IMG/VR virus record: IMGVR_UViG_3300043464_002284 | Coordinates: 124,001-188,000 of that record | Direction: 5' to 3' (one strand) | Length of the DNA stretch: 64,000 bases | Shown: positions 8,576 to 27,696 of the stretch, one piece after another | Layout: each line of letters opens with the position of its first letter | Numbering within the stretch: position 1 is the first letter of the stretch | Notes under the pieces: generated by a model | What the model was told of the DNA's origin: nothing | Seen by the model: only the letters and a program-made list of their open reading frames with translations | Databases searched by the model: none | Translations under genes and position numbers: made by a program

Positions 8576-8614
8576 GGCAAGTCTGCGAGTCTGGCATGAC
8601 ATTTGCTGCTCAAA

Positions 8615-8632
8615 CCTTACGAAAATGTAAGG
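8615..8632. promoter_or_regulatory. CCTTAC-N6-GTAAGG palindrome upstream of -35 boxes (also at 9039, 10200, 12369, 14500)
   Basis: Five copies, each about 11-22 bp upstream of a TTGCAA/TTGACR hexamer. Confidence 0.7.
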
Positions 8633-8643
8633 AAATTTTCTGC

Positions 8644-8678
8644 TTGCAAGCAAAGTTTGGGTTGGTATAATGTCGATA
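8644..8678 (+). promoter_or_regulatory. Sigma70-type promoter with GTCGATA right after the -10
   Basis: TTGCAA-16-TATAAT-GTCGATA; same layout at 9068, 11253, 14528. Confidence 0.7.
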
Positions 8679-8710
8679 TGAAGAATAAGAGAAAGAAAAG
8701 AGGAAAAAAG

Positions 8711-9037
8711 ATGGAAAATCTGAATTACGATCTGGTTTCTGACTGCTGTGGTGCTGGTTGTGCTTTTGAGACCGGTGAGGGTAAGGATAAAATCGGGATT
8801 TGCATGGATTGCAAGGAATGGTGTGGTGTGGTAGAAGATATTCCGGAAGATGAGGATATGGTGAAAGCATTGAAAGATAATTCCATGACGATGGAAGAAT
8901 ATGATAGCCTGCCCGATTACATCCCCGGTCTTGACGACGGAGAGGGTTGGGACCCCATTATGGGGGATGCTGAAGATCATATCGAAACGGATGATCAGTG
9001 GCTCGACGATTTCTGTGGCGAAGAGGATTTTGCCTGA
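8711..9037 (+). CDS. Acidic hypothetical protein with CC/CxxC motifs
   Basis: SDCCGA...CMDCKEWC then D/E-rich tail; promoter and RBS upstream. Confidence 0.7.
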   Translation: MENLNYDLVSDCCGAGCAFETGEGKDKIGICMDCKEWCGVVEDIPEDEDMVKALKDNSMTMEEYDSLPDYIPGLDDGEGWDPIMGDAEDHIETDDQWLDDFCGEEDFA

Positions 9038-9132
9038 ACCTTACGAAATTGTAAGGAAACTTTCCGCTTGCAACCTACAGAATACTCTGTATAATGTCGA
9101 TATAAGAACAAGAGAACGATAAAGAAAAGGGA

Positions 9133-9381
9133 ATGAAAATGATCACCATCAACAATCGCGACGAACTGAACAACCTCCTCTATGGTGCTGATTCGACCAG
9201 CCCCGAAACTTTGGTTGGAATCGCTCGTATCGGCGGCGAGTTGCTCGCTGAGGCTTTCCACTATTACGAACTGAGCGACGGGACCGCTTCCATCGGAGAT
9301 TTCTTTCCCTGCGGCGATGAGGGTGAGGGGATCAATGTTGATCGCGACGGAAACATTCTTAGCGATTTTCTCTACTACTGA
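9133..9381 (+). CDS. Acidic hypothetical protein
   Basis: Promoter and RBS upstream. Confidence 0.65.
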   Translation: MKMITINNRDELNNLLYGADSTSPETLVGIARIGGELLAEAFHYYELSDGTASIGDFFPCGDEGEGINVDRDGNILSDFLYY

Positions 9382-9412
9382 ACAATGTACAGTAGTGTAC
9401 AATGATTCGACG

Positions 9413-9490
9413 TAAAGCCTTATGCTATAAGGACTTACGACAAATCCGGCCCGCCCCTTTTGACGTAACTCCTTGATGCGTATATACTTA
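9413..9490. repeat. Double-palindrome element 2 (core inverted)
   Basis: Starts 9413/9466; core CCGGCCCGCCCC. Confidence 0.9.
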
Positions 9491-10117
9491 CAGCAAATAT
9501 AAAAAATATTATGTTTGGCATGAAATTATATTTCAAAAATCCAAAGATTTCCCTTGCAACGGTCGATACATACTGTATAATGAAAGCACAAGAGAACGAT
9601 AGGACAAAGGAAAAGAAAATGACCAACGTATCTTTCGACATGGTGATGGCTGGCGTTCGACAGGTGTTCGGCAAGGAATCGTATCGTGTTCGGGTCGTCC
9701 ACTCTGGTGCATATACGAAAGTCGAATCGAAGGATATGTTTCACTCTGTAACGATCAAGTCGAATGAGACGATCATGGAAAAGCTGAATGAGCTGTTCTA
9801 TGATGTGGTGTGTGAGGATTGTGCGTCGGGCATCTAGGCTTGACAACACCATAGCGTATACGGTATAATAGAACCAACACAAGAAAGAAAAGGAAAAAGA
9901 TGTTTCAGACCAACTATAAAACTGTGACGAATAACCTTGACAAGCTTTTCTCTGCTATGCGAGCTGGTAAGTATCACTGCGTGCTCGACCCAAGGGGTAA
10001 CGCTCATGTGGGCCTTATCAATGGTATCATGCGTGAAGATGGTAGCGGAAAGAATTGGATCGTAATAGTGACCAACCGTACAGTAAGCGAAAAGGTCTTC
10101 ATTCACGCCTCATGACC

Positions 10118-10195
10118 TAAAGCCTTACCCTATAAACACTTAGGGCGAGGCCGGGCGCCCGCATCTGATGTAAGTCCTTATCTCATATAGGCTTA
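10118..10195. repeat. Double-palindrome element 3
   Basis: Starts 10118/10171. Confidence 0.9.
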
Positions 10196-10237
10196 TGAAC
10201 CTTACGATATTGTAAGGAAGAAAACTATTGCTAGAGC

Positions 10238-10266
10238 TTGACGTTGGTCGATAATAGGTGTAGAAT
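10238..10266 (+). promoter_or_regulatory. Sigma70-type promoter with CGATA spacer motif
   Basis: TTGACG-TTGGTCGATAATAGGTG-TAGAAT. Confidence 0.8.
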
Positions 10267-10527
10267 AAGAACACAAGAAAGAAAAGGAATCCCAATGATT
10301 ACGACTATCGAATACGTTCAGTTGTTTGCCTTGATTGCTTTTGCTGGTTTCATCTCGTACACTGCCCACGAGGTGGGTAACGCTATTCAATCCATTCTTC
10401 ACGACTGAGGGAATATGTCTAGGTATCTGCCTGATGGTTATGTAGATTATGCTACATACAATATCAAAGAAGTTTTACAGTTTCTTCAACAATTACTAGG
10501 AATCATTAGCGAAAGCTGGTAAACAAA

Positions 10528-10845
10528 ATGACACACTTTGAAGCAGTAAAGATGGTTCGTGGTAAGACTAATAAGGATACTCGCAAGGTTGGCAACAATA
10601 CCTATGCGGAAATTCTTCCCGATGGTAGCGTAGGCATTATGCTGCATAGTACCTATGTGGTAAAGATTCATCCTGACAACTCTGCTACCCTCAATAGTGG
10701 GGGGTGGCATACTGCTACCACTAAGGATAGAATCAACCAGTATTCACCTGTACGGGTATATCAACGCAAGGGACAATGGTATCTGGAATGTGGTCTAGAG
10801 TATGAAGATGGTATGATTGTGGCCGATAATAACCTTATCTACTAA
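10528..10845 (+). CDS. Phage hypothetical protein
   Basis: GNNT...LHST...LNSGGWHTATTKDRIN motif seen in phage early hypothetical proteins. Confidence 0.6.
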   Translation: MTHFEAVKMVRGKTNKDTRKVGNNTYAEILPDGSVGIMLHSTYVVKIHPDNSATLNSGGWHTATTKDRINQYSPVRVYQRKGQWYLECGLEYEDGMIVADNNLIY

Positions 10846-11085
10846 GAAAGAAAAAAGATGAAAAACGTTTTTACCTTTACGATTGCTTGGGGCGTTTCAA
10901 TTTGTTTGCTTGTTGCAGTAATGCAGGCTACTGGTTTGGGGCATCCTAACTGTGAGCCTACTACTGTAGGATATGCTGAATTCTACGCTACACTGTTCGG
11001 ATGTTCAGTGCTCAGTTGTATACTAGGTATGGCTTGCCTTGGGCTGGTCGTTCTGGTATATCCACAAAAAACATAGCACTAGCCG

Positions 11086-11163
11086 TAAACCCTTGCTGCT
11101 AAAGGACTTAGGGCAAGGCGGGCGGGCCGGGATCGACGTAAGTCCTTATGGCGTATGCACTTA
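11086..11163. repeat. Double-palindrome element 4
   Basis: Starts 11086/11139; core GGCGGGCGGGCCGG. Confidence 0.9.
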
Positions 11164-11871
11164 CGACAACTTAGCAAATACTATGCCAATATCAAAGAAA
11201 ATGACGAAAAGTTTTGTCAAATTCTCTTGACATAAAAATATCCGGATTTCTCTTGAAAGCTCAAGATGAGCATGGTATAATGTCGATATAAGAGATAGAG
11301 AAGAAAGAAAGAGAGAGTTGAGATGGAAAAAGTTACGAGTGTGAATGGTTTCATTGCTTCGCTTCCCAAGATTCGGAAGCGTAAGATTTGGAGTGTGACG
11401 ATTGACGGAAAGATTGTTCAAGGCGTGAGTGCTGACGACAATCGTAAGGAAACTGCTGAAGCGTATATCGCCAGCAAGTATCCTGGTCAAGCTTTCACTC
11501 TCAAGTTTGTTGAGTGGAGAATCTGACCCCCATTAGAGGGGATTGACAAGCACAAAAACTTTGATAGAATACCAGAAAGAGAAAGAGAGAAAAGAATGTA
11601 CGAGATTGGCGACAGTGTGATGCTCAAGGGATTCGAGAAACAGATTGTTGGAAAGATTGTTTCCTACCACTATGATGAGGGAAATGTGTGGACGGTTAGG
11701 ATGCCCGGTGGGCAGCAATGGGATTTTGGCGACCATGAGCTTTCGCCCGCGGTTGATGCCTACGGACAACCCTGGACTTATCGACCCACCCATAGTGGGG
11801 GTTGATAGGCAAAAGAATTGTTGATAGAATCCACACACAAGAGAACGATAGACCTTAGAGAGAAAAAGAAA

Positions 11872-12252
11872 ATGAAAACCAAGTTCCCTATCATCGAAAA
11901 TGCCAAGCGTCAAGCCCGTATGATCTTCAAGGGTATCGCCGTGCCGATGCTCGTGGAAATCCCCGATGATAAGGTTGTGGATGATGTCGATTACGTTTAC
12001 GGTGTGACTGACCACAAGCGTTACGTCATGAGCGAAAAGGTTCTCAAGTTCAATCGTACCGCACTGAAGAACATTGGCAAGGTTCGCAAGGAAAAGGCTG
12101 ACCCCCGCTATGTGGGGGGTGAGGATACCATGATCGTTCCGGTTGGCAAGCCGGGAAGTCGTGAGCGTGTCGAGGAACTGACCAGACAGTATGCTGCCAT
12201 TGCTGCTTGTGGTGAAGAAATCAGCCCGTTCAGCTTCAAGAGTGATGAATAA
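11872..12252 (+). CDS. Hypothetical protein
   Basis: RBS; GC-richer codon usage. Confidence 0.65.
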   Translation: MKTKFPIIENAKRQARMIFKGIAVPMLVEIPDDKVVDDVDYVYGVTDHKRYVMSEKVLKFNRTALKNIGKVRKEKADPRYVGGEDTMIVPVGKPGSRERVEELTRQYAAIAACGEEISPFSFKSDE

Positions 12253-12287
12253 ACGCACACTACTGCACAAAGACATAGCAGTTGACC

Positions 12288-12365
12288 TAAAGCGTTACCC
12301 TATAAGGACTTAGGGCAAACGCGCCCGCCCTTATTTGACGTAAGTCTTTATGTCTCAACAACTTA
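12288..12365. repeat. Double-palindrome element 5 (core inverted)
   Basis: Starts 12288/12341; core GCGCCCGCCC. Confidence 0.9.
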
Positions 12366-12692
12366 CAACCTTACAACATTGTAAGGAAACTTTTCCTGCT
12401 CTAACCTGTTGACATTGGACGATAATAGAGGTATAATCGTAAGACAAGAGGGAGAGAATAAAGATGAAAGATATGAACACTCGTACAATGCAAGACATTC
12501 TGAGGAATACCCAGATCAAGCTGGAAACTTGCACAATTCCCGAAGTAAGGGATGGCTATAAGCTGCTGATCAGGCACCTTGCTAGTGAACTTCTGTTTAG
12601 GTATCGTCTAGCCAAATAGCCTAAAGTTTTGCATGGTAGAATGTCGATAATAGGTATAGGGAAAACGAGAACTAACAACAAAGAGGAAAAGT

Positions 12693-12896
12693 ATGGATAA
12701 TCTCACGTTGCCGCAGAGACATGATTGGGTAGCTTTTGACTATAAGGGTAAGAGTTTCAAGGGTGAAGTTCGTAGGGTTTACGATAAGCCCAAGGGTCAT
12801 TTGATGATTGTGAAATTGGGTGAGGGTAAGTATCGTTCGTGCTATCTTGAGCAGTGCGGGAATCTAACTGCTATCTCTACTCAACCGGAGGCTTGA
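12693..12896 (+). CDS. Small SH3/WYL-like beta protein
   Basis: VAFDYKG...GKYRSCYLEQC resembles the WYL F-x-Y...R-x-F-x-x-x-R pattern. Confidence 0.35.
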   Translation: MDNLTLPQRHDWVAFDYKGKSFKGEVRRVYDKPKGHLMIVKLGEGKYRSCYLEQCGNLTAISTQPEA

Positions 12897-13272
12897 ATAT
12901 GAGCGATTTTATTATGGTGTGGGTCTGGGTGGCGGTTATGTGTGGGGTTTTGTTCTTTGCTTATTTTCTCACTATTGTGGGAGAAGTTTGGCAGAGGATA
13001 AACGAGTATGAGAATATGCGGGCCAGGGGTTTTACTCTTATGAAGAATGATGAGGGTGATGATTTCTGGGTAGGATACGGGGATTGACCACTTAAACCAA
13101 AATGGAGATACAGGGATGTATCAGTTTGATTTTATTAGTGTGGCTTTTGGGTATATTGTTGGTATTATTCTGTATGCTAGTATGTCAAATATCATGTATA
13201 TGGAGGAAAATGATGAAAATCAGTGATTATGTTCTATTAGGGGTGTGCTTCATTCTAGGATGTGGCTTAACG

Positions 13273-13350
13273 TATCTCCTTCACCAGTAAGGACTTACGG
13301 CGAGTCCGGCCCGCCCCGCAAAGCGTAAGTCTTTATCTATCAACACTTTA
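13273..13350. repeat. Double-palindrome element 6 (core inverted; overlaps the end of a small ORF)
   Basis: Starts 13273/13326. Confidence 0.85.
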
Positions 13351-13414
13351 CGTCAACTGCAAAATTTTTTCTATTTGGCACGGAATTATATTCTGGAATT
13401 TTCCAAGTTACTGC

Positions 13415-13443
13415 TTGACACTGGCCGATAATAAGAGTATAAT
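13415..13443 (+). promoter_or_regulatory. Consensus sigma70 promoter with GCCGATA spacer motif
   Basis: TTGACA-CTGGCCGATAATAAGAG-TATAAT. Confidence 0.85.
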
Positions 13444-13720
13444 CGCAGCATCACGAACGGAAACCACAGGAACCAGAATCATGCTGAATTTCGACGAGAT
13501 CAATGCTATTCTGAACGACATGGCCGAAGCGGGAATTGTTGAGCCGATGGTTGAGCCTATCGACGACCCCAGTGTAGAAGTCAACTTTTGGGATTGGGCC
13601 GATGTTGTGGGTGCTATTGACGACTTTGTTCCAGAGGAGTATACTAATGCTTAGTGCGATTGCTTTTGTTGTCGGATACGTTGGCCTGTTTTACATCACC
13701 ACCATCGTGAGGGATTGACC

Positions 13721-13996
13721 ATGAGCTACGAGTATGATGATCTTGAAGACTTTTATGGTATCGACGCTGATGATCGTACTAACGATTATTGGGCTGGAGA
13801 TGATGACTTGGAGAATGATTCTAATGATTCGTTTGATGATAGTATGGATGGCGATGCTGAGTCTGCGTTGGCTTCCGCTGGATGGGGAACCGACGAGGAT
13901 TACGGTTACTATGGTGACGATGGAGTAGAAGATTTCCACGCCGATGAGGCTGTGGGATTTGTGGATTACAATGAAGACGGGCCATATAACGACTAA
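13721..13996 (+). CDS. Extremely acidic small protein (DNA-mimic candidate)
   Basis: About one third D/E, one Arg, no Lys, aromatic-rich. Confidence 0.65.
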   Translation: MSYEYDDLEDFYGIDADDRTNDYWAGDDDLENDSNDSFDDSMDGDAESALASAGWGTDEDYGYYGDDGVEDFHADEAVGFVDYNEDGPYND

Positions 13997-14012
13997 TTAA
14001 AAGGAAAGAACA

Positions 14013-14405
14013 ATGCAGTATCGAAAGATTGCGACGGGGATGATCGAAGCTACATATGAGAATTATTCACAGTGGCTAGAAGATGGTGTTCTGGCTGAAG
14101 AATTGAATAAGTATGAAATTCCAGTATGGAATGAAATGAACGATAGTACCAAGTGTTCTGCCATAGAATATGTTTATCTGAACCGAGATACTATTGAGCT
14201 ACATTCTGGACTTGTAGAATCATGGGTACAAGCTACGGCTTACTTTATGATCTATGATTTTGCTACTATCCTAGCACATGACGGAAATCCAGAAATCGAA
14301 ATTTTCTTTGATGATATGGATTTCATGATGGATGAAGATACCCTGAACGATGAAGATGTTCAGGAGCAACTTGGAATTAGTCCAGATTTTGGAGGAAAAT
14401 TCTAA
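14013..14405 (+). CDS. Acidic hypothetical protein
   Basis: AAGGAAAG RBS. Confidence 0.65.
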   Translation: MQYRKIATGMIEATYENYSQWLEDGVLAEELNKYEIPVWNEMNDSTKCSAIEYVYLNRDTIELHSGLVESWVQATAYFMIYDFATILAHDGNPEIEIFFDDMDFMMDEDTLNDEDVQEQLGISPDFGGKF

Positions 14406-14415
14406 GCACTCTCCG

Positions 14416-14493
14416 TAAACCCTTTGTGCATAAGCACTTAGGGCTGGCGGGGCGGGCCGATTTTGATGTAAGTCCTTATACCACAATACTTTG
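14416..14493. repeat. Double-palindrome element 7
   Basis: Starts 14416/14469. Confidence 0.9.
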
Positions 14494-14921
14494 CGACAAC
14501 CTTACGGTATTGCAAGGAGACATCCACTTGACATCTAAAGTTTCTCTGCTATACTTGTCGATATAAGAGATAGAGAAAGAGAGAGTGAAGAATGAGTAGG
14601 TATTACGAAGGTCGTTTCAACCCGTACAATCGTCATGATACGGGAATGTATGTGGTCTATCGCAAGAGCGACAACAAGCACCTTGGAACGGTTGTGGATT
14701 GTCGTAGTGAGAGCGAAGCCAAGCGCAAGGCTGGCTATGAGTTTGGTTGTGAGTGCTATGTGAGTGAAATTGAGGAATAAAATGAAAACGAAAAAGAAAG
14801 AGTTGACAGCACACCAGAAAGCTGTTATACTCATGAATCGTGAAGCTAGTCGTGCAGTGAATCGTGTGAAGATGTTGGAACAGTTGTATCTTGAAACCAT
14901 GAAAGCAAAGGAACTTGTTAA

Positions 14922-15152
14922 ATGAAGTGCGTTGTTACCCATACGGATACTTTTGGTGGTGAAGCTAACTATGGTTGGGTGAATCGTTATGAGTTCATCC
15001 CCAAGAAGAATGCTTCTCAGCGTAGTGTTATTCGTAAGGCCAAGGCTCTGGCTGGTATGACAGCGGTCAAAGCTGAGACTTATGACTATGGTGATGGTTA
15101 TACCGTTAAGCCTCGCGGCTATGCTCAAATCATCTTTGTTGATTTTGAGTGA
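14922..15152 (+). CDS. Hypothetical protein
   Basis: ORF ends just before element 8. Confidence 0.6.
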   Translation: MKCVVTHTDTFGGEANYGWVNRYEFIPKKNASQRSVIRKAKALAGMTAVKAETYDYGDGYTVKPRGYAQIIFVDFE

Positions 15153-15171
15153 AAAAAATAATCTCTCGTCG

Positions 15172-15249
15172 TAAACCCTTTGTGCTCAAACACTTAGGGC
15201 CGACGCGGGGAGCCGGATTTGACGTAAGTCCTTATCTTGCATAGGGTTG
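15172..15249. repeat. Double-palindrome element 8
   Basis: Starts 15172/15225. Confidence 0.9.
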
Positions 15250-15330
15250 TGACGAAAGAGAATTTCTTACCGAATCTATTGACAATAGCCGATACTCCTG
15301 TAGAATGACTCAACCAAAGGAGGACAAGCT

Positions 15331-20503: not shown

Positions 20504-20505
20504 CC

Positions 20506-20583
20506 TAAAGCCTTGTCCCTAAAGAACTTAGGGCGAGGCTGGGCGGCCGAATTTGATCTAAGTCCTTATCCCCAAACAACTTA
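20506..20583. repeat. Double-palindrome element 13
   Basis: Starts 20506/20559. Confidence 0.9.
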
Positions 20584-21047: not shown

Positions 21048-21062
21048 GTTAACAAAACTGGA

Positions 21063-21307
21063 CTATGCCAGTATAAAGGGCTAACGCCCCACCGATAAAT
21101 AGGTGAGATTTTAGGCATAGTGCGGCGGGGTCAAACCCGCGTAATGATAGTTCGTTGCAAGACTAAAAGGTGCAACTTAGAGGGTTTAACCAACCAGATA
21201 AGTCGGGTGGTTCCGTCGAAGTTATCGACCTCTAGAGTATATACTAATGACGATGGTAAGACGATAACGCCATCAAACCGTAATGCCTACATGGGACGCC
21301 ATGTGGG
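21063..21307 (+). ncRNA. Putative structured RNA upstream of tRNA-Arg
   Basis: Stems CTATGCC/GGCATAG, GCGGG/CCCGC, GTTGCA/TGCAAC, TAGAGG/CCTCTA, GATGG/CCATC, CCTACATGG/CCATGTGGG. Confidence 0.6.
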
Positions 21308-21344
21308 CTTGCGGCGTTGAGTGGGTACGATATAATAGAGAGAC

Positions 21345-21416
21345 GGCCCCATAGTTAAATGGATATAATAAGTGACTTCTAATCTCTAGTTGCAGGTTCG
21401 ATTCCTGCTGGGGCTA
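21345..21416 (+). tRNA. tRNA-Arg(TCT)
   Basis: Cloverleaf; loop CTTCTAA; T arm GCAGG-TTCGATT-CCTGC. Confidence 0.85.
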
Positions 21417-21421
21417 TTGTT

Positions 21422-21495
21422 GGGGGCGTAGATCAATTGGTTAGATCGCTAGCTTGTCACGCTAGAGGTTGCGGGTTCGAGTCCCGTCGCTCTCG
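21422..21495 (+). tRNA. tRNA-Asp(GTC)
   Basis: Cloverleaf; CTAGC-TTGTCAC-GCTAG. Confidence 0.92.
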
Positions 21496-21502
21496 TTTGT
21501 TG

Positions 21503-21580
21503 TAAACCCTTGCTACTAAAGCACTTAGAGCAAGTTCGCCGGGCCGGGGTCGTCGTAAGTCCTTATCTCACAAGGGTTTG
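21503..21580. repeat. Double-palindrome element 14 (directly after tRNA-Asp)
   Basis: Starts 21503/21556. Confidence 0.9.
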
Positions 21581-21660
21581 CATCAAGAATAATTTTGTGA
21601 AGTTTTTCGCTTGACGTTGCCGATACTATAGTGTAGAATCGGTAGACACAGGAGAAGAAC

Positions 21661-22365
21661 ATGAAAACTGCTGACGGTAATGATAAGTTGGGTAAGGGTT
21701 GTATTGTTGTGAGTCGTCCGGTTGGCGATACTTGCCCACCCGATTGCGATTATCTCGGAAACGGCTGCTATGCCGAAGCTACTGAAAACCAGTATAAAAA
21801 TGCTCGCACTGCCGGGTTTGCTAATATCATAACGGAAAAGAATAAAATCCGCTCTATGATTCTGGAAGCAAAGCGTCGTGAGAAGTCTATCCGTTGGCAT
21901 GAACGTGGCGACTGGTTTCTCAATGGCGAACTTGACCTAGACTATGTTGCGAATGTAACGTGGGCTTGTGAGAGTATTCTTGCCGATGGTGATACGTTGC
22001 CCGATATGTGGTTTTATACTCATATCTACGATTCTCGGCTTGTGAGTCTGGAAAAGTATATGAATGTATACGCTAGTGTGCATGATGATAACGATATGGG
22101 CGAAGCACTATCACAGGGTTTCAAGCTGTTCGCATGGTGTGACAGCGATATGAAGATTGCACCCAAGCGACCCAAGAGCAAGGCAAAGGCCGAAGCATGG
22201 CGACAAGCACTGCCGAAGCTGGTGGTTCTCAATGCGACAAAGTTTGTTGTGTGTCCAGAAATCCGTCGTGGTCGTTCGGAAATCACTTGCACTGGCACAA
22301 AAGATAGTATATCATGCGACTTGTGTGTGCGTGGTTTGGCTAATGTATTGTTTCCCGCACACTAA
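21661..22365 (+). CDS. Gp88-like Cys-motif phage protein
   Basis: TCPPDC...GCYA...IRWHERGD...FYTH pattern; C-terminal CP...C...C..C. Confidence 0.6.
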   Translation: MKTADGNDKLGKGCIVVSRPVGDTCPPDCDYLGNGCYAEATENQYKNARTAGFANIITEKNKIRSMILEAKRREKSIRWHERGDWFLNGELDLDYVANVTWACESILADGDTLPDMWFYTHIYDSRLVSLEKYMNVYASVHDDNDMGEALSQGFKLFAWCDSDMKIAPKRPKSKAKAEAWRQALPKLVVLNATKFVVCPEIRRGRSEITCTGTKDSISCDLCVRGLANVLFPAH

Positions 22366-22368
22366 ACC

Positions 22369-22446
22369 TAAGTCCTTGACCGTAAAGAACTTACGGCAAG
22401 GGCGAGCGGACGGATCGGTCGTAAGTCCTTGACTCATAAGACTTTA
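22369..22446. repeat. Double-palindrome element 15
   Basis: Starts 22369/22422. Confidence 0.9.
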
Positions 22447-22529
22447 GAGATTATTCAAGTTTCACTATTGCATTTGTCGATAAGATACTGTAGAATGGTG
22501 GAGTATCACCAACTTGGAAAGGGAAAGCT

Positions 22530-23096
22530 ATGAGCTATGTTGGATTGTATGATGACGCAGGAAGTAAGAACGCTTTCTACATTGTCAAAGATAAAAAGAT
22601 TGGCCGGAAGCGTGTGGGCTTCAAAGAGTTTGAAAATAAGCAAGAGGCAGAGTTTGCCCATCGGGTTCAAAAGCATCTGGCTCAGTTTGATTTGGCCCCT
22701 ATGGTATATGGGGATGTTGGTTTTATTCGTAGGCATGATGGTGAGTTGACTTGTTATGGTTATTTGACCGAAGTGGCTCGGCCTATGTCTGAATGTCATG
22801 ATGAAGATTGTGATGGTGAATGTTTTCGGAGCGAGTGTAAGAATGGTACTACTATCTCTGAACTAGTTTATGATTTGGGTGAACATGGCTTAGAGTATAA
22901 CGATGCCCATAAGGGTAATTTTGGTTATGTTCGACGTAAGGGTTCATGGGTTCCGGTTGCTATCGACCTTGGAATCGAGAGCTTTACTGATTGGGATGAA
23001 GATATTTATGGAAAGTTTGATTATGCTGCTGACGAGTTTGATGACTATGGACGATGCAATTGTGTTCAATGCAAAAAGTTCCGAGAGGAAGAATAA
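22530..23096 (+). CDS. Protein-kinase-like (ePK/APH fold) protein
   Basis: LAPMVYG, DAHKGNFG (HxxN), AIDLG (DxG); C-terminal CxCxxC. Confidence 0.6.
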   Translation: MSYVGLYDDAGSKNAFYIVKDKKIGRKRVGFKEFENKQEAEFAHRVQKHLAQFDLAPMVYGDVGFIRRHDGELTCYGYLTEVARPMSECHDEDCDGECFRSECKNGTTISELVYDLGEHGLEYNDAHKGNFGYVRRKGSWVPVAIDLGIESFTDWDEDIYGKFDYAADEFDDYGRCNCVQCKKFREEE

Positions 23097-23499
23097 TGAG
23101 CAAATACTATATCAAGTGTGGAACACTAGAATTAATTTATTCCTGCAACAAATGTCCACGGGATGCTGCGATGGATGCTATTTGGGAAACAAATGAAAAT
23201 GATACACTAGATGAGCATTTCTATATAGATGAGCGTGGATATAAAGACTATACAAATGCTGATGGATTAACTTGTGTGTTACATACTAGCCACATTCTAA
23301 AAGATGCCGGATGGAGTATTGAATAATGTGGACAAAAATAGACGATAAAAAAGTAAGACACTTATGGGAATGTGCTGATTGTGATAATCTAGTTTATGTT
23401 GAACCTTGGTTCTATTCCGAAAATGGCGAACCCTTTTGCACAAAGTGTGAGAGGGATATGGAGTATATTCGAACAGAAGTGGATATGTAACACTTTCCG

Positions 23500-23577
23500 C
23501 AAACCCTTGCTGCGTAAGCACTTAGGGTGAGCGGGGGCGGCCGGATTTGACGTAAGTTGTTGCAGGATGCGGACTTA
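23500..23577. repeat. Double-palindrome element 16
   Basis: Starts 23500/23553. Confidence 0.9.
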
Positions 23578-23615
23578 GAGAAATTCCAGAAAACTCCTAA
23601 AGTTTAGGGTGGTGA

Positions 23616-24029
23616 TTGGTCGATAATAAGGATATGAGAACGAGACGAGAATCAACAAGGGGTGAGAGAATGATCCAGTGGGTTGGGATTGTGATTACGA
23701 TTTTGGGTCTGGCGTATACGGGTGTGAAGGACTACCAGAAAGGGGACATAAAATTTCCCAAGATGCCTCAAAAACAGGTCTTGACAAAGGTAGTTTATCC
23801 GATACAATACTGTCTGATGGCTTACGATCCTAACATTGATAGAATTTTTTACCTACACGAAAATGGAATATGGTATGATTACGCTCCACAACAACGACGA
23901 TATTCGACCACGCCGCAACCATATCAAGCTCAAGGTGCGACCGCAGTGGCAGGTTCCTACGGGTCACAAGGAACACCGGCATACCGTTATGGACAATCGC
24001 CCCAAGCGTCAGCGAACCCGATCCGCTGA
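23616..24029 (+). CDS. Membrane-anchored hypothetical protein
   Basis: TM helix WVGIVITILGLAY. Confidence 0.55.
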   Translation: MVDNKDMRTRRESTRGERMIQWVGIVITILGLAYTGVKDYQKGDIKFPKMPQKQVLTKVVYPIQYCLMAYDPNIDRIFYLHENGIWYDYAPQQRRYSTTPQPYQAQGATAVAGSYGSQGTPAYRYGQSPQASANPIR

Positions 24030-24079
24030 AAATCGTAGGGCTTGCGAGAATGGGGACTATTGAGTATAATTAGTAGTAT

Positions 24080-24152
24080 GCCAGTGTAGCTCAGTCAGCA
24101 GAGCGTCAAATTTGTAATTTGAATGTCGCGGGTGCAACTCCTGCCACTGGCT
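24080..24152 (+). tRNA. tRNA-Thr(TGT)
   Basis: GCCAGTG/CACTGGC acceptor; TCAAA-TTTGTAA-TTTGA; atypical D and T loops. Confidence 0.8.
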
Positions 24153-24218
24153 TTATGAGTCGAAAGAAAAAACGTATGTAAACGCTCTATCTGGTGTATA
24201 TATTCGTATCCAGAGGAG

Positions 24219-24746
24219 ATGTCTATGATTGTAAAATGTAGTTGCTGTAATAAAGAGTTTAATAAGCAGAAGTGCGAGGTAATTAAGTCAAAAAATAATT
24301 ACTGCTCACGTTCCTGTGCAGCAAAAATAAACAATAGGTTATTTAAAAAGAGAAACAAAAAAGTTAGACATTGTAGGAACTGTAAGATTGAAATTATTGG
24401 CAAGGGAAAACTTTATTGTAGTATTAAATGTCAAAATGTTTTTCAGTCAGAAATAAAGATAAAGTCATGGCAGCTAGGAATGGACGATGGATACGAAACT
24501 AATGGAACAGTAAGGAGATATATAAAAAAATTCTTACTGGAAAAAAGAGGTCAGAAATGTGAGGAGTGTGGTTGGAATAAAATTAATCCAAATACCAATA
24601 AGTGTCCATTGGAAATACATCATAGGGATGGAAATTATAAAAATAATATAGAAGAAAACTTACAAATACTATGTCCGAATTGCCATTCATTGACAGATAC
24701 ATATAAGAATATGAACAAAGGTAATGGTAGAGAATGCAGAAGATGA
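24219..24746 (+). CDS. HNH endonuclease inserted in the tRNA cluster
   Basis: CEECG...LEIHHRDG...NN...NLQILCPNCH; N-terminal CSxxC repeats. Confidence 0.88.
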   Translation: MSMIVKCSCCNKEFNKQKCEVIKSKNNYCSRSCAAKINNRLFKKRNKKVRHCRNCKIEIIGKGKLYCSIKCQNVFQSEIKIKSWQLGMDDGYETNGTVRRYIKKFLLEKRGQKCEECGWNKINPNTNKCPLEIHHRDGNYKNNIEENLQILCPNCHSLTDTYKNMNKGNGRECRR

Positions 24747-24817
24747 TCCGGGATGGTGAAATGGTATCACAGCAGACTTTGGATCTGCGTTTCTACGTTC
24801 AAGTCGTAGTCCCGGAA
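24747..24817 (+). tRNA. tRNA-Gln(TTG)
   Basis: TCCGGGA/TCCCGGA; GCAGA-CTTTGGA-TCTGC. Confidence 0.9.
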
Positions 24818-24821
24818 TTAT

Positions 24822-24893
24822 TGGCGAGTAGCACAACGGTTGTGCAAGCGGCTGTTAACCGCTAGGTTACAGGTTCGAATCCTGTCTCGCCAG
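24822..24893 (+). tRNA. tRNA-Asn(GTT)
   Basis: TGGCGAG/CTCGCCA; AGCGG-CTGTTAA-CCGCT. Confidence 0.9.
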
Positions 24894-24898
24894 CTTGA

Positions 24899-24985
24899 GG
24901 AAGAATGGCAGAGTGGTCTAATGCATCTGATTACTAATCAGAAGAAGCGTAAAAACTTCCGTGGGTTCGAATCCTACTTCTTCCG
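24899..24985 (+). tRNA. tRNA-Ser(ACT)
   Basis: GGAAGAA/TTCTTCC, G73, long variable arm, TCTGA-TTACTAA-TCAGA. Confidence 0.85.
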
Positions 24986-24988
24986 CTC

Positions 24989-25070
24989 GGTAGATTACTC
25001 AAGTGGACAACGAGGGCAGACTGTAAATCTGCTGGCATTGCCTTCGCTGGTTCGAATCCAGCATCTACCA
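24989..25070 (+). tRNA. tRNA-Tyr(GTA)
   Basis: GGTAGAT/ATCTACC; GCAGA-CTGTAAA-TCTGC; long variable arm. Confidence 0.92.
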
Positions 25071-25071
25071 C

Positions 25072-25149
25072 TAAGTTGTTGGTATGAAAGGACTTAGGAC
25101 AAATTCGGCGGGCCGCGTTCGACGTAAGTGATTACAGAGTAACGACTTA
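25072..25149. repeat. Double-palindrome element 17 (directly after tRNA-Tyr)
   Basis: Starts 25072/25125. Confidence 0.9.
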
Positions 25150-25234
25150 GGATTTGTTTAAAGTTTGTTCTTGACAGCTGCCGATAACTAGTGTATGATT
25201 GCTAATCGGAGGCTGATGTTTGAGTTGCGAGTGC

Positions 25235-25306
25235 GGCCCCATAGTATAGTAGTTAGTACGCTGGCCTTTCACGCCGGAGACCTGGGAGCGTAACCCAGTG
25301 GGGTCA
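25235..25306 (+). tRNA. tRNA-Glu(TTC), atypical T loop
   Basis: GGCCCCA/TGGGGTC; CTGGC-CTTTCAC-GCCGG; T loop AGCGTAA. Confidence 0.75.
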
Positions 25307-25307
25307 T

Positions 25308-25357
25308 TTGTTTCTGCTAATCCTACGGATTTGGAAGTTGTGGAAGTAGTCAGCGAG
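25308..25357 (+). repeat. 50-bp ungapped motif, copy 2 (immediately after tRNA-Glu)
   Basis: TTGTTTCTGCTAATCCTACGGATTTGG...TAGTCAGCGAG. Confidence 0.85.
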
Positions 25358-25613
25358 AATTTCTAAACATTTGCCTCTTGACAAGCCGATAATGGTATGG
25401 TAGACTATTGGAATAAGAAAGGAACCTAAGATGAAGAACCTTCGCATCTATGATATTGTGACCGAGGACGGTCAAACCCTGGCTGACATTCAACTCTCTA
25501 TGCAAGAGGATTTTGATTGGGCTGATGTTTTTGATAAGCTCTATGATTTTACCACAGAAAACGTCCAAAGTTATTCCTACCAAGAAATTACCGTACAAAC
25601 TGAATAACTAGAT

Positions 25614-25686
25614 GGGCCTTTAGCTCAATTGGCAGAGCAAGGAGCTTTTAACTCTTAGGTTCGGGGTTCGAGTCCCCGAGGGCCCA
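25614..25686 (+). tRNA. tRNA-Lys(TTT)
   Basis: GGGCCTT/AGGGCCC; AGGAG-CTTTTAA-CTCTT. Confidence 0.92.
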
Positions 25687-25740
25687 CTTGACAATGGTTG
25701 GTTGTTGGTGTAGAATATGGGTAAGAAAGGGAGTAGAAAT

Positions 25741-25917
25741 ATGAGATATGAAGATTATTATGATGGCTACAACTATGACTATGATGAATTGGTAGAAAAT
25801 ACCGAGGATCTTGGTCTGGATGAAGAACCTTGGATGAATGATATTGAGGAAGAAGATGACGAGGTTCCATCTTACGGTAAGAATTATTATCCAAGTATTG
25901 AAGATGAAGATGAATAA
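25741..25917 (+). CDS. Very acidic small protein
   Basis: D/E/Y-rich; RBS GGGAG. Confidence 0.6.
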   Translation: MRYEDYYDGYNYDYDELVENTEDLGLDEEPWMNDIEEEDDEVPSYGKNYYPSIEDEDE

Positions 25918-25922
25918 TTTTT

Positions 25923-26003
25923 GTGTGTGCTTCTAGGTGGGACTAGAACCTTTTCTTTATTCCTTTCTTATAATGGGCTGTTGGTTCAAATCCAACCACA
26001 CAC
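25923..26003 (+). pseudogene. tRNA-like element with degenerate anticodon arm
   Basis: GTGTGTG/CACACAC acceptor; GTTGG-TTCAAAT-CCAAC T arm; TTCTAG/CTAGAA D-like arm; pyrimidine tract in place of the anticodon arm. Confidence 0.55.
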
Positions 26004-26006
26004 TTT

Positions 26007-26513
26007 ATGAACGCTTGGCAACAAGAGCTTGATGACTTCCGGCGTACCCCAGATGGTAAGATTATCCAAGGTGCTGCTCACACTAGCCGAGTATTAAATC
26101 ACAAATATCGGAATGGTGTGATTATCAAGGCTGTTTGTTCTCTGCGTAAAATTGAGAATAATTTCGATAGCATTGCTTGTTGTGGCGTAAGTGGTTTGAT
26201 GGTAGTGCCACAGATTGCAGAGATTCTCAATAAGAATATTATAGTTGTTCGTAAGGATGAAAAGCGATATAGCGAATTCTTTCTTGAGGGTGTCTCTCCG
26301 TCTCGATATATTATTGTAGATGATTTGATCTGTTCTGGAAATACTCTTAAGCATATTATTGCTAGTATTTCTGATGATACTCCAAGAGCAAAGTGTATCG
26401 GGGCGTACTTCTATCTCGGTGAGGAATGTTCTTTCAATGCTTCCACCGATTCTAAATTTTTTGAGAAGCAGTTTGGGACGATTATCCTAAACCCTTACCA
26501 GCCAAAGACTTAG
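26007..26513 (+). CDS. Type I phosphoribosyltransferase-family protein
   Basis: PRPP-binding motif IIVDDLICSGNT. Confidence 0.8.
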   Translation: MNAWQQELDDFRRTPDGKIIQGAAHTSRVLNHKYRNGVIIKAVCSLRKIENNFDSIACCGVSGLMVVPQIAEILNKNIIVVRKDEKRYSEFFLEGVSPSRYIIVDDLICSGNTLKHIIASISDDTPRAKCIGAYFYLGEECSFNASTDSKFFEKQFGTIILNPYQPKT

Positions 26514-26565
26514 GACGAATCCGGACGCCCCGGCCAGCCGTAAGTCCTTATCCTGAAACAACTTA
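26488..26565. repeat. Double-palindrome element 18 (core inverted; overlaps the PRTase 3' end)
   Basis: Starts 26488/26541. Confidence 0.9.
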
Positions 26566-26667
26566 CGACCTGCGGAATTTTTCCAAGGTTTTCGCTTGAC
26601 AGTGACGATAACATAGTGTAGAATCAGCGTATAAGAACGATTGAACAGCAACACGAAAGGGATGATT

Positions 26668-27618
26668 ATGGCTCATGCAGTTGAACAGATGATGTTTGTT
26701 GGTGCGACCCCGTGGCACGGTCTGGGCAACCAGCTCGACGAGGCTCCCACGGTTTCGGAGGCGATGACTGCCGCCGGTTTGGATTGGGAAGTTGGTCTGA
26801 AGGATTTGGTCACGGTGGACGGTCAACCAGTTCCGGCCCGTGCGACCTATCGCAAGACCGACGACAGTATTCTGGGCGTTGTCGGCCCGCGATACACTCC
26901 GCTGCAAAACAGCGAAGCGTTCGATTGGTTCCAGCCGTTTCTGGACGCTGGTGAGTGTGCGTTGCATACTGCCGGTTCGCTCCACAGCGGTCAGAAAGTT
27001 TGGGTTCTGGCCCAACTGAACCGCGACAATAGCGAGATCGTGAAGGGCGACGAGGTTGGGAAGTTTATTCTTCTCAGCAACTCGCACGATGGCACGACTG
27101 CTATCCGGGTTGGCTATACGCCGATCCGCGTTGTGTGTGCTAATACTATGGCAATGGCCCATAGCAAGAGCAGTGGTTCCAAGTTGATCCGTATTCGTCA
27201 CACACGTTCCAGCAAGACGAATCTGGAAAACGTGCGAGACATTATGGACAACATCAACATGGAGTTTGAGGCGACTGCGGAGCAATTCAAGTTCCTCGCG
27301 TCGAAGAACTTCAATCAGGCCGACGTTCGTCGCTATGTCAAGGTGATGCTCGACATCGACGGTACGCCGGACGATCAGATCAAGACTCGTACCAGAAACA
27401 TCATGGACGAGATTCTGAATCTGGTCGAAGGCCCGAAGCAGAGTGCTACGGGCGTTCGCGGAACGTGGTGGGCCGCTTATAACGGCTTCAACGAGTATCT
27501 GAATTACAACAAGGGTCGCACCGAAGATAATCGGCTCGACAGTCTGTGGTTCGGATCGAACGCGAATGACAACACCAAGGCTCTGGAAAAGGCCATGCAG
27601 TTCGCTCAGGCACTCTAA
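26668..27618 (+). CDS. DUF932 family phage/plasmid-like protein
   Basis: TPWHGLG...AGLDWEV...YTPLQN...TAGSL..GQKVW...LLSNSHDG...TPIRVVCANT...RHT...W.AYN...EY. Confidence 0.9.
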   Translation: MAHAVEQMMFVGATPWHGLGNQLDEAPTVSEAMTAAGLDWEVGLKDLVTVDGQPVPARATYRKTDDSILGVVGPRYTPLQNSEAFDWFQPFLDAGECALHTAGSLHSGQKVWVLAQLNRDNSEIVKGDEVGKFILLSNSHDGTTAIRVGYTPIRVVCANTMAMAHSKSSGSKLIRIRHTRSSKTNLENVRDIMDNINMEFEATAEQFKFLASKNFNQADVRRYVKVMLDIDGTPDDQIKTRTRNIMDEILNLVEGPKQSATGVRGTWWAAYNGFNEYLNYNKGRTEDNRLDSLWFGSNANDNTKALEKAMQFAQAL

Positions 27619-27642
27619 TACCTCGTAGTGGGGGTAATGTGG

Positions 27643-27677
27643 GAGCCGCCACTCAGCAATGGGTGGCGGTTCTTTTT
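27643..27677 (+). terminator. Strong intrinsic terminator
   Basis: GAGCCGCCACTCA-GCAA-TGGGTGGCGGTTC followed by T5. Confidence 0.9.
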
Positions 27678-27696
27678 ACTCCTAGACCACTTGACG

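What the first reader, a model, noticed from the sequence alone, without database searches (positions are those of the whole stretch)
8576..27696. Promoter-ORF-element cassettes suited to modular shuffling
Seen: nearly every interval between elements starts with its own near-consensus sigma70 promoter(s) and holds 1-5 tiny ORFs, tRNAs or an ncRNA, ending at the next element. Known analogy: repeated promoter-stem-loop (PeSL) cassettes mediate modular shuffling in some T4-type phages. Inference: recombination between elements could excise, duplicate or swap self-expressing modules, making this an accessory (host-takeover/anti-defence) cassette array with no integron integrase in this window.
Basis: partly seen in the sequence, partly recalled or inferred. 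Interest (0 to 1): 0.6.

Follow-up and report, generated by a model that had tools for sequence, protein, structure and literature searches.

The report
Palindrome-punctuated phage early-gene array
A 19-kb block of tiny, self-promoted early genes in an uncultivated 238-kb lake phage is punctuated by 19 copies of a conserved 90-bp double palindrome that behaves like a protein-binding site, marks some but not most gene gain/loss breakpoints, and is replaced slot-for-slot by an unrelated palindrome in sister phages.

Summary
Window 8493-27785 holds 19 full copies (plus 3 half copies) of a ~90-nt element found nowhere else in the 237,915-bp phage genome. 16 of 18 intervals open with a sigma70-like promoter and hold 1-8 tiny ORFs or tRNAs.

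The element is a dyad-symmetric double palindrome with four CGTAAGTCCTT-like half-sites around a GC-rich core. Some positions are invariant in 94/94 copies from six genomes, and there is no base-pair covariation. This fits a dsDNA protein site, not an RNA hairpin or an attC.

It fills a fixed slot: the upstream stop codon lies in its left edge, and the next -35 lies just downstream.

The shuffling idea is only partly supported. Hybrid elements and at least 6 junctions where homology ends inside an element exist. However, gene turnover is mostly single-gene and about as frequent at promoter gaps and tight junctions. The right two-thirds of the array is collinear in all relatives. The genome has no tyrosine or serine recombinase.

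The unexpected result is that sister phages carry the orthologous array with a different element (CTGCCAAAATGGCAG, GC core, CTGCCAAAATGGCAG) in the same slots. One relative has chimeric elements. The binding factor and the function remain inferred.

The parts
8493..27785 (+). The whole array: 19 elements, 18 intervals, about 55 small + strand ORFs, 9 tRNAs. It is a GC3 island (GC 0.44 against 0.36 for the rest of the genome).
8493..8578 (+). Type-1 element e01 (weakest copy, 41.5 bits)
   Evidence: nhmmer
9403..9502 (+). Type-1 element e02. Together with its promoter and the ORF at 9619-9837 it is absent from relative G002.
10108..10204 (+). Type-1 element e03
11073..11174 (+). Type-1 element e04
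12276..12373 (+). Type-1 element e05
13261..13363 (+). Type-1 element e06
14404..14504 (+). Type-1 element e07. Population variants break at its edge (14405, 14413, 14416) and in its core (14454, 14469).
15160..15259 (+). Type-1 element e08, left parent of the hybrid element in genomes that lack module m8
15260..15867 (+). Module m8: promoter at 15279 plus the ORF at 15331-15876 (181 aa, net charge +28). It is present in G000, G002 and G003 and absent from G001, G004 and G005.
15868..15966 (+). Type-1 element e09, right parent of the hybrid element
16661..16751 (+). Type-1 element e10
17529..17629 (+). Type-1 element e11
19241..19336 (+). Type-1 element e12
20494..20595 (+). Type-1 element e13
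21492..21592 (+). Type-1 element e14. The orthologous slot in G006 holds a type-2 element.
22358..22457 (+). Type-1 element e15. The element plus its promoter (about 155 nt) is an indel between two genes that abut directly in G001, G004 and G005.
23488..23588 (+). Type-1 element e16
25061..25161 (+). Type-1 element e17
26477..26574 (+). Type-1 element e18. The orthologous slot in G006 holds a type-2 element, while the stop codon, promoter, UTR and gene stay aligned.
27685..27785 (+). Type-1 element e19 (last full copy)
27845..27881 (+). Single palindromic unit (half element)
28010..28046 (+). Single palindromic unit (half element)
28559..28598 (+). Single palindromic unit (half element)
8613..8671 (+). 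PeSL-like unit: hairpin CCTTAC-N6-GTAAGG followed by a promoter (TTGCAA-16-TATAAT)
   Evidence: (D16, D18)
9037..9095 (+). PeSL-like unit inside a module, with no element: hairpin + promoter + UTR before the ORF at 9133-9381
10198..10266 (+). PeSL-like unit: hairpin + promoter
12367..12437 (+). PeSL-like unit: hairpin + 12/12 promoter
14498..14555 (+). PeSL-like unit: hairpin + 11/12 promoter
13415..13443 (+). Module-leading promoter, 12/12, with CGATAA in the spacer. It is representative of the family at 10238, 11253, 15279, 16150, 16774, 17659, 20625, 21611, 25171 and 26596.
   Evidence: (D11, D13, D15)
24219..24746 (+). HNH endonuclease gene inserted in the tRNA cluster; among the six type-1 genomes compared it is found only in G000

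Best explanation
The region is the densest part of the phage's early, host-RNA-polymerase-transcribed block (genome 130-190 kb).

Each repeated element is a dyad-symmetric stretch of double-stranded DNA. It consists of two palindromic units, each 11 bp - 7 bp - 11 bp with half-site about CGTAAGTCCTT, flanking a GC-rich core (GGSSSSCC).

It most likely is the binding site of a sequence-specific, oligomeric DNA-binding protein that has not been identified. It sits in a fixed slot: flush against the stop codon of the last gene of one transcription unit, and a few tens of bases upstream of the -35 of the next.

I infer that the bound site punctuates the array, acting as an insulator, a roadblock terminator, or a common regulatory site for the tandem strong promoters. 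The array has no intrinsic terminators that could do this.

Because the elements, and equally the promoter/5'UTR sequences, are repeated about 20 times in direct orientation, they also serve as patches of homology. Recombination at these patches occasionally deletes, inserts or swaps genes.

They are not integron-like sites, and they are not the main boundaries of gene flux.

Shown: the anatomy, the conservation without covariation, the slot position, the hybrid junctions, and the slot-for-slot replacement by a second element type in sister phages.

Inferred: protein binding, the insulator/terminator role, and homology-driven rather than enzyme-driven recombination.
For: - Conservation: 94 copies from six genomes have invariant ACTT, TAA.T..TT, G51 and TT positions. 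The symmetry is perfect about model positions 54/55.
- No structure signal: at every variable i/109-i pair the paired fraction equals the expectation. RNAalifold finds 6 pairs and no compensatory change. Fold z-scores are mostly non-significant. The local hairpins show 74.2% paired cells against 75.2 +/- 0.7 in shuffles.
- Slot position: the upstream stop ends 40-44 nt from the element centre in 36 cases. The -35 starts 50-90 nt after the centre in 53 of 94.
- Terminator-like sites are at chance level.
- Restriction to the array: elements occur only in the array in G000 and in five complete relatives.
- Second element type: G006 and G019 carry the orthologous array with a different 47-nt double palindrome and no type-1 copies. 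The four type-1 genomes checked (G000, G002, G003, G005) carry no type-2 copies.
- Slot-for-slot replacement: upstream of the DUF932 gene and of gene 43, the stop codon, promoter, UTR and gene align between G000 and G006 while the element is swapped.
- Type-2 spacing: the -35 starts 24-26 nt after the element end in 6 of 13 cases.
- Chimeric elements (type-2 unit, core, type-1 unit) exist in G008.
- Recombination: a hybrid element at the m8 indel, homology ending 0-44 nt from element centres in at least 6 independent junctions, and population variants.
- No tyrosine or serine recombinase in the genome.
Against: - No binding protein was found. Differential gene content between four type-1 and two type-2 genomes gave only weak candidates.
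- Tested over 13 genomes, the HNH/EndoVII-like and the 87-aa candidates do not track element type. The one protein that does track type 1 (138 aa) has a signal peptide.
- No transcript data exist: no RNA run holds the sequence. Termination or insulation is therefore untested.
- For type 1 the distance from element to -35 varies by about 40 nt, which argues against direct contact with RNA polymerase.
- G008 mixes unit types in one genome, which complicates a model with one cognate factor per genome.
- A few elements are followed by a sigma54-like -24/-12 motif. This hints at another role in a subset of modules.
Confidence: 0.5

Rival explanations
1. The elements exist chiefly as recombination linkers, as an enlarged PeSL. 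Homologous recombination between them, through excised mini-circles, is what shuffles self-expressing modules, and selection keeps them for that purpose.
For: - A hybrid element lies exactly at the m8 indel.
- Homology breaks inside elements.
- Variant joints are seen in lake contigs.
- The first gene after an element/promoter is the most variable: 42% occur in 2 or fewer of 6 genomes, against 20% for middle and 16% for last genes.
- True PeSL-like hairpin-promoter units are present.
- PeSL precedent: PMC2839356, PMC4122927.
Against: - Element junctions are barely more labile than other junctions: adjacency retention 70% against 76% and 85%, and presence/absence boundaries 42% against 46% and 39%.
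- There is no excess of identity shifts at elements.
- Copies within a genome are only 60-75% identical, with exact runs of 15 nt or less. That makes them a poor substrate for homologous recombination.
- Invariant, dyad-symmetric positions and the wholesale type switch point to recognition by a protein rather than to mere homology.
Confidence: 0.2
2. The elements are sites of a dedicated site-specific recombinase, making the array integron-like or res/dif-like. Each 11-7-11 unit would be a core site.
For: The 11-7-11 geometry resembles the core sites of tyrosine recombinases. Breakpoints cluster 0-25 nt from the centre. Chimeric elements are joined at the core.
Against: - There is no Phage_integrase or Resolvase domain in the complete genome, while positive controls gave hits.
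- The 7-nt spacers differ between copies.
- Sequence, not structure, is conserved, which is the opposite of attC.
- Cassettes carry their own promoters.
- Most indels are not bounded by elements.
Confidence: 0.05
3. The element acts as RNA: a terminator, an RNase processing site or a 3' stabiliser at the end of each transcript.
For: It lies at the 3' end of each unit, directly after the stop codon. PeSL stem-loops are terminators (PMC2839356). Some copies fold with z about -2.
Against: There is no covariation in either the local or the long-range pairing scheme. There is no U-tract. Three of six copies fold no better than shuffles. Central stem positions are mismatched in most copies.
Confidence: 0.07
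4. The element, with or without its promoter, is a selfish MITE-like or homing-associated insertion that spreads into the stop-codon/promoter slot.
For: - Element + promoter is a clean 155-nt indel between two abutting genes.
- Element + promoter + ORF at 9380-9839 is an indel relative to G002.
- The element has terminal inverted repeats.
- Two element types and chimeras look like competing elements.
- HNH and PD-(D/E)XK-like genes lie in or near the array.
Against: - No transposase was found.
- Copies are old and diverged, with conserved motif positions only.
- Orthologous copies are kept across genomes at 70-90% identity.
- No target-site duplication is seen.
- No copies lie outside the array, nor in 185,579 prokaryote genomes apart from two short lake MAG contigs.
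Confidence: 0.1
5. The paired palindromes are upstream activator sites for a sigma54 enhancer-binding protein.
For: TGGCAY-N5-TTGCT motifs lie just after some elements: window 8592, G006 (4 copies) and G008 (3 copies). The type-2 unit spacing of about 32 bp equals three helical turns. From my own knowledge, this is like the NtrC sites at glnAp2.
Against: Only 1 strict match on the + strand and 1 on the - strand in the whole G000 genome. Orientation is inconsistent. Nearly all modules have sigma70-type promoters instead.
Confidence: 0.04

Closest known systems
PeSLs (promoter-early stem-loops) of T4-type phages (Arbiol et al. 2010, PMC2839356; Comeau et al. 2014, PMC4122927)
   Same: Repeated composite regulatory sequences lie between small ORFan genes in an early, plastic region. 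They have near-consensus sigma70 promoters and an element just upstream of the promoter. Some indels and replacements have a junction inside the repeat. Five small hairpin + promoter units in the window fit the PeSL description directly.
   Different: - The main element is a 90-bp, four-half-site, dyad-symmetric sequence with invariant positions and no RNA-structure signal. It is not a short GC stem-loop terminator.
- It is confined to one 19-kb array.
- It exists in at least two unrelated sequence types that replace each other slot for slot between sister phages.
- The phage is not T4-type: its terminase is about 25% identical to any deposited phage.
- Breakpoints are not concentrated at the elements.
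Integron cassette arrays (attC sites)
   Same: A direct array of short genes, each followed by an imperfect palindrome that begins at or next to the stop codon. The promoter-proximal position is the most variable.
   Different: There is no integrase. Sequence rather than folded structure is conserved. There are no RYYYAAC/GTTRRRY core sites. The cassettes have their own promoters. Gene flux is not cassette-wise.
REP/BIME and Correia-type intergenic palindromes of bacteria
   Same: Repeated intergenic palindromes lie at gene 3' ends and may bind proteins or carry promoter parts.
   Different: Those are scattered genome-wide in bacteria and act partly as RNA hairpins. Here the copies are phage-borne, in one array, all in one register with promoters, and show no covariation.
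Host-takeover module of Bacillus phage SPO1 / early regions of T4 and T5 (from my own knowledge)
   Same: A dense run of very small early genes behind strong host-type promoters.
   Different: To my knowledge, none of those has a conserved double-palindrome between the units.

Membership tests
PeSL (T4-type promoter-early stem-loop cassette) | Strong sigma70-like early promoter followed by a Shine-Dalgarno sequence and ATG | tested here: met
   81 sites against 39.6 +/- 5.6 expected. 16 of 18 intervals open with a site of at least 9/12. Shared spacer and UTR motifs (D9-D15).
PeSL (T4-type promoter-early stem-loop cassette) | Stem-loop (effective terminator) directly upstream of the promoter | tested here: not met
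   For the 90-nt element there is no covariation, no U-tract, and fold z-scores are mostly non-significant. Only 5 small CCTTAC-N-GTAAGG hairpins (8613, 9037, 10198, 12367, 14498) fit, and one of them is terminator-like in the scan.
PeSL (T4-type promoter-early stem-loop cassette) | Indels and replacements between close relatives have junctions in the repeats | tested here: inconclusive
   Some do. Overall, element junctions are only slightly more labile than others.
PeSL (T4-type promoter-early stem-loop cassette) | Mini-circles formed by recombination between neighbouring repeats | not testable with these tools
   Only assembled contigs of DNA runs were available. No circle junction was seen, but contigs cannot show rare forms.
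Integron (attC cassette array) | IntI tyrosine recombinase | tested here: not met
   PF00589 gives no match in the complete genome, while controls gave hits in 14 of 14 genomes.
Integron (attC cassette array) | attC: conserved folded structure with variable sequence, and R''/L''-L'/R' boxes with GTTRRRY | tested here: not met
   Sequence is invariant at many positions, pairing is at the level of shuffles, and the consensus has no GTTRRRY.
Integron (attC cassette array) | Promoterless cassettes read from a common Pc promoter | tested here: not met
   Nearly every interval has its own promoter.
Serine-resolvase res site | Cognate resolvase or invertase | tested here: not met
   PF00239 gives no match in the genome.
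MITE / selfish palindromic insertion | Near-identical dispersed copies, target-site duplication, and a transposase in trans | tested here: not met
   Copies are 60-75% alike and occur only in the array. There is no duplication at the e15 indel. No copies were found in prokaryote genomes apart from 2 short lake MAG contigs.
Rfam RNA families | Match at the gathering threshold | tested here: not met
   Only tRNAs and a tmRNA were found in the window.

The most novel reading that the evidence does not exclude
The double palindromes are a new class of phage cis-element. In this reading they are interchangeable 'punctuation' sites, each read by its own still-unknown DNA-binding protein, that insulate about 20 tandem early transcription units. 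Their specificity can be switched across a whole array: type 1, type 2, and chimeras joined in the GC core. On the terminase tree the switch has happened at least twice in one abundant clade of lake jumbo phages. This would work like an incompatibility or specificity system for an exchangeable early-gene block.
Probability: 0.3. Interest if true: 0.8.

Novelty: new variant of a known kind. Interest (0 to 1): 0.62.

Why it matters
Repeated regulatory cassettes have been proposed as the linkers of phage modular evolution, but they are documented mainly in T4-type phages.

This case is in an unrelated, very abundant clade of uncultivated freshwater jumbo phages. At least 580 viral contigs encode relatives of its terminase. 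The array here is large and clean, and the data allow a quantitative test.

The test shows that the conspicuous repeat is not the main driver of gene flux.

The slot-for-slot replacement of one palindrome type by another, with chimeras, gives a concrete handle on an unknown DNA-protein recognition system that organises early phage transcription. The system is directly testable with synthetic DNA.

Tried and rejected
- **RNA or ssDNA structure.** RNAalifold, single folds, my own pair statistics on 94 copies and the count of structure pairs all gave no support.
- **Known relatives.** Megablast and blastn of the array or element against 50,697 phage records found nothing beyond a 64-bp chance-like hit. 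The terminase is only about 25% identical to deposited phages.
- **Recombinases, T7-like RNAP, ParB.** None was found in the genome. The PF00940 control gave no hits anywhere, so that blank is uninformative.
- **Sigma54 idea.** There is only one strict motif per strand in G000.
- **Identity-shift test.** Identity shifts across elements (mean 0.101) are not larger than within modules (mean 0.122).
- **Search for the trans factor by differential gene content.** I compared four type-1 with two type-2 genomes.
  - The HNH/EndoVII-like protein (38436-39017, - strand) and the 87-aa protein (16827-17090) do not track element type over 13 genomes.
  - The 138-aa protein (30370-30786) tracks type 1, but it carries a signal peptide.
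  - The protein at 23670-24029, the most type-discriminating shared protein, has an N-terminal membrane helix and a Q/G/Y-rich tail and 511 unnamed homologues.
  - No fold prediction was run because no candidate looked DNA-binding.
- **Read laying artefacts.** Several 'joints' and loose ends (12393>11275; loose ends at 11293 and 15213) are cross-mapping of paralogous hairpin, promoter or element copies from window 8509-9590. They are not rearrangements.
- **Host.** Two short MAG contigs (Alphaproteobacteria, Hyphomicrobium) and one 'Candidatus Planktophila' protein name disagree with each other, so no host is claimed.

Full report
**What the genome is.** The window is bases 124,001-188,000 of a 237,915-bp IMG/VR virus record with terminal repeats.
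- It has a tape-measure-like 6,560-aa ORF, RIIA, a DNA polymerase, and weak portal and terminase matches.
- It has its own sigma factor, 13 tRNAs and a tmRNA.
- Near-identical DNA occurs in 24 lake or freshwater metagenome runs.
- Its terminase is about 25% identical to that of any deposited phage. Yet at least 580 viral contigs encode relatives, the best 80 at 77-100% identity.
- It therefore belongs to an abundant, uncultivated clade of freshwater jumbo phages, not to the T4 type.

**Checking the observation.**
- A repeat search, then an nhmmer profile, give 19 full copies of a ~90-nt element between window 8493 and 27785, plus three half copies just to the right. No copy lies anywhere else in the genome.
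- Sigma70-like sites are twice as frequent as in shuffles (81 against 39.6 +/- 5.6). Every site scoring 10/12 or better but one lies on the + strand. Genome-wide, such sites cluster at 130-190 kb and are densest in the array.
- 16 of 18 intervals open with a promoter. The intervals hold 1-8 small + strand ORFs, nine tRNAs and one tRNA-like sequence.
- Terminator-like sites are at chance level.

**Anatomy of the element.** I aligned 94 copies from six genomes.
- The element is symmetric about model positions 54/55. Its layout is: outer half-site CnTAAanCCTT, 7 nt, inner half-site AAGnACTTAGG, 9 nt, core GGSSSSCC, 9 nt, CGTAAGTCCTT, 7 nt, AAcnnnTTAcg.
- ACTT, TAA.T..TT, one G of the core and the outer TT are invariant in 94 of 94 copies.
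- At every variable pair of mirror positions, the fraction of Watson-Crick or G-U pairs equals what independent columns would give.
- RNAalifold finds six invariant pairs and no compensatory change. Three of six single folds are no better than shuffles.
- The two local hairpins score 74.2% paired cells against 75.2 +/- 0.7 for shuffles.
- So what is conserved is sequence with dyad symmetry, not pairing. That is the signature of a double-stranded site read by an oligomeric protein. It is the opposite of an attC site or a terminator.

**Position of the element.** In 36 cases the stop codon of the upstream ORF ends 40-44 nt before the centre, inside the element's TTGAC edge. In 53 of 94 cases the -35 of a promoter scoring at least 10/12 starts 50-90 nt after the centre. 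The element therefore fills a defined slot between the end of one unit and the promoter of the next.

**Relatives and synteny.**
- A pattern scan of viral contigs found arrays of the element in about 45 contigs.
- Five complete genomes (G001-G005, 230-244 kb) each hold one array of 15-18 copies.
- I fetched the arrays and compared them by blastn and by heuristic gene families.
- Modules m9-m18 are collinear in all six genomes.
- The left third (m1-m8) is reshuffled, but gene by gene. For example, families 12, 14, 15, 19, 24 and 103 occur in different combinations.

**Quantifying the breakpoints.**
- Two genes adjacent in one genome and both present in another stay adjacent across 70% of element junctions, 76% of other gaps of at least 40 nt, and 85% of tight junctions.
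- Presence/absence boundaries are 42%, 46% and 39% for the same three kinds of junction.
- The first gene after an element/promoter is the most variable: 42% occur in 2 or fewer of 6 genomes, against 20% of middle and 16% of last genes.
- Shifts in pairwise identity are no larger across elements than inside modules.
- These counts rest on my own gene calls and on six related genomes. They are descriptive, not independent samples.

**Evidence that elements can be recombination joints.**
- Module m8 (15260-15867) is absent from G001, G004 and G005. In its place they have a single element whose left part matches e08 and whose right flank matches e09.
- A scan of all element pairs with homology on one side only found at least 6 independent junctions where homology ends 0-44 nt from the element centre, and fewer in the promoter/UTR zone.
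- In four lake runs, contigs of variant strains break at the edge or in the core of e07, delete gene 14013-14405 up to the element edge, or start exactly at an ATG behind a foreign promoter/UTR.

**Evidence against elements being the main boundaries.**
- Elements are themselves indels. e15 plus its promoter (about 155 nt) is inserted between two genes that abut in three relatives.
- e02 + promoter + ORF (9380-9839) is missing from G002.
- Gene family 12 is joined to different upstream regions at its UTR. This is the PeSL pattern described by Arbiol et al. (PMC2839356) and Comeau et al. (PMC4122927).
- Five small hairpin-promoter units in the window are PeSL-like in the strict sense.
- The genome has no tyrosine or serine recombinase.

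**A second element type.**
- One complete relative, G006 (terminase 81% identical), has no type-1 element. It does have the homologous, GC-enriched, collinear array.
- Its units are separated by a different 47-nt element: CTGCCAAAATGGCAG, a GC-rich core of about 15 nt, and CTGCCAAAATGGCAG. There are about 18 copies at a spacing of roughly 0.4-1.6 kb.
- The -35 starts 24-26 nt after the element in 6 of 13 cases.
- Upstream of the DUF932 gene and of gene 43, the stop codon region, promoter, 5'UTR and gene align between G000 and G006, while the element between them is swapped.
- Type 2 occurs in 95 stretches of DNA spanning several dozen viral contigs.
- The four type-1 genomes checked (G000, G002, G003, G005) hold no type-2 unit. 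The two type-2 genomes hold no type-1 element in their arrays.
- G008 holds chimeras: a type-2 unit, a core and a type-1 unit, followed by the usual promoter.
- On a terminase tree of 15 genomes, type 2 falls in two clades nested among type-1 lineages. This needs 2 changes, and the AU test against type-2 monophyly gives p = 0.0495.
- The common architecture with interchangeable recognition sequences is the strongest argument that the elements are sites of a specific binding protein, and that their job is tied to the slot rather than to their sequence as such.

**Search for the binding protein.** Differential gene content and co-occurrence over 13 genomes gave no convincing candidate. The factor may be a host protein or a diverged homologue.

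**Other properties of the array.**
- It is a GC3 island in all six type-1 genomes (0.42-0.47 against 0.24-0.31 in the flanks).
- Between G000 and G002 the whole early block (130-190 kb) is the best conserved part of the genome: median 82-95% amino-acid identity per 10-kb bin, against 32-84% elsewhere.
- The array's DUF932 gene is 98/93/91/88/78% identical to its homologues in G002, G001, G004, G003 and G005, while the terminase is a uniform 78-81%.
- So shared array genes are not fast-evolving, and their relationships differ from those of the terminase. This fits exchange of early-region segments between lineages, but I did not test that formally.
- Almost all ORFs are without family. The exceptions are DUF932, a PRTase-like protein, DUF7227/GP88, a Kyanoviridae Gp96-like match just below cut-off, and an HNH endonuclease.

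**Verdict.**
- The PeSL analogy is apt for the promoter/UTR repeats and partly apt for the element.
- The cassette-array (integron-like) reading fails.
- The element is best read as a protein-binding punctuation site of early transcription units that also serves as an occasional recombination joint.
- Its existence in two interchangeable types, with chimeras, is not described in any paper I could find.

Noticed in passing
window 52964-53318 (+): A full-length tmRNA gene (Rfam RF00023, 91.5 bits) in the phage early block. It sits beside 13 tRNAs spread over the window.
   Followed up: no
window 452-1150 (-): A phage-encoded sigma-70-family factor (Sigma70_r2, 25.3 bits, over the cut-off), transcribed away from the early block. 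It is presumably for later transcription.
   Followed up: no
window 8493-27785, and the arrays of G001-G005: The array is a compositional island. GC3 of its ORFs is 0.42-0.47 against 0.24-0.31 in flanking genes, in all six type-1 genomes. Possible causes are codon adaptation of the earliest genes to the host, a different origin, or biased gene conversion.
   Followed up: partly
G000:C1:130001-190000 compared with the rest of the genome: Between G000 and G002 the early block is the most conserved part of the genome (82-95% amino-acid identity against 32-84% elsewhere). Array-gene identities rank the relatives differently from the terminase. This suggests exchange of early segments between lineages.
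   Followed up: partly
G000:C1:81201-100883 (-), locus L151: A 6,560-aa ORF with a minor-tail/tape-measure domain and an ADP-ribosyltransferase domain (PF03496, 24.9 bits). It may be an injected enzyme that modifies a host protein, as T4 Alt does (from my own knowledge).
   Followed up: no
window 8592-8607 (+); window ~11188 (-); L248 (D9; 4 copies); L384 11695, 12738, 14487: Good sigma54-type -24/-12 motifs (TGGCAY-N5-TTGCT) lie directly after some elements in several genomes, in both orientations. Their meaning is unexplained.
   Followed up: partly
L384 14410-14472 and 16585-16645 (G008): Chimeric elements made of one type-2 unit, a GC core and one type-1 unit, each followed by a sigma70-like promoter. 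G008 also has ordinary type-1 copies.
   Followed up: partly
window 24219-24746 (+): An HNH endonuclease gene sits between tRNA-Thr and tRNA-Gln and is absent from that position in the relatives. It is probably a homing insertion in the tRNA cluster.
   Followed up: no
window 18178-18250 (+): A tRNA-like sequence (Rfam tRNA, 37.8 bits) that ARAGORN does not call. G003 has an untyped tRNA at the matching place.
   Followed up: no
window 15331-15876 (+) and 14013-14405 (+): The ORF of the element-bounded module m8 is very basic (net charge +28) and has a D...EVK motif, so it could be a nuclease. The ORF at 14013-14405 is very acidic (net charge -22), like DNA-mimic proteins. Both are without family.
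   Followed up: no
G021:C1:20162-23224: The terminase homologue matches in two pieces within one 1,031-aa open frame, so it appears to carry an insertion (an intein or a similar element).
   Followed up: no
G005:C1:179535-180500: The DUF932 homologue of G005 has an in-frame TAG. The homologues of the ORF at window 30370-30786 in G003 and G005 also carry in-frame stops. These may be pseudogenes or sequencing errors; I did not check for recoding.
   Followed up: no
L149, L150 (genome contigs): Two short lake MAG contigs, labelled Alphaproteobacteria and Hyphomicrobium, carry the type-1 element. They are probably phage contigs binned with bacteria. One protein homologue is labelled Candidatus Planktophila. 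The host remains unknown.
   Followed up: no
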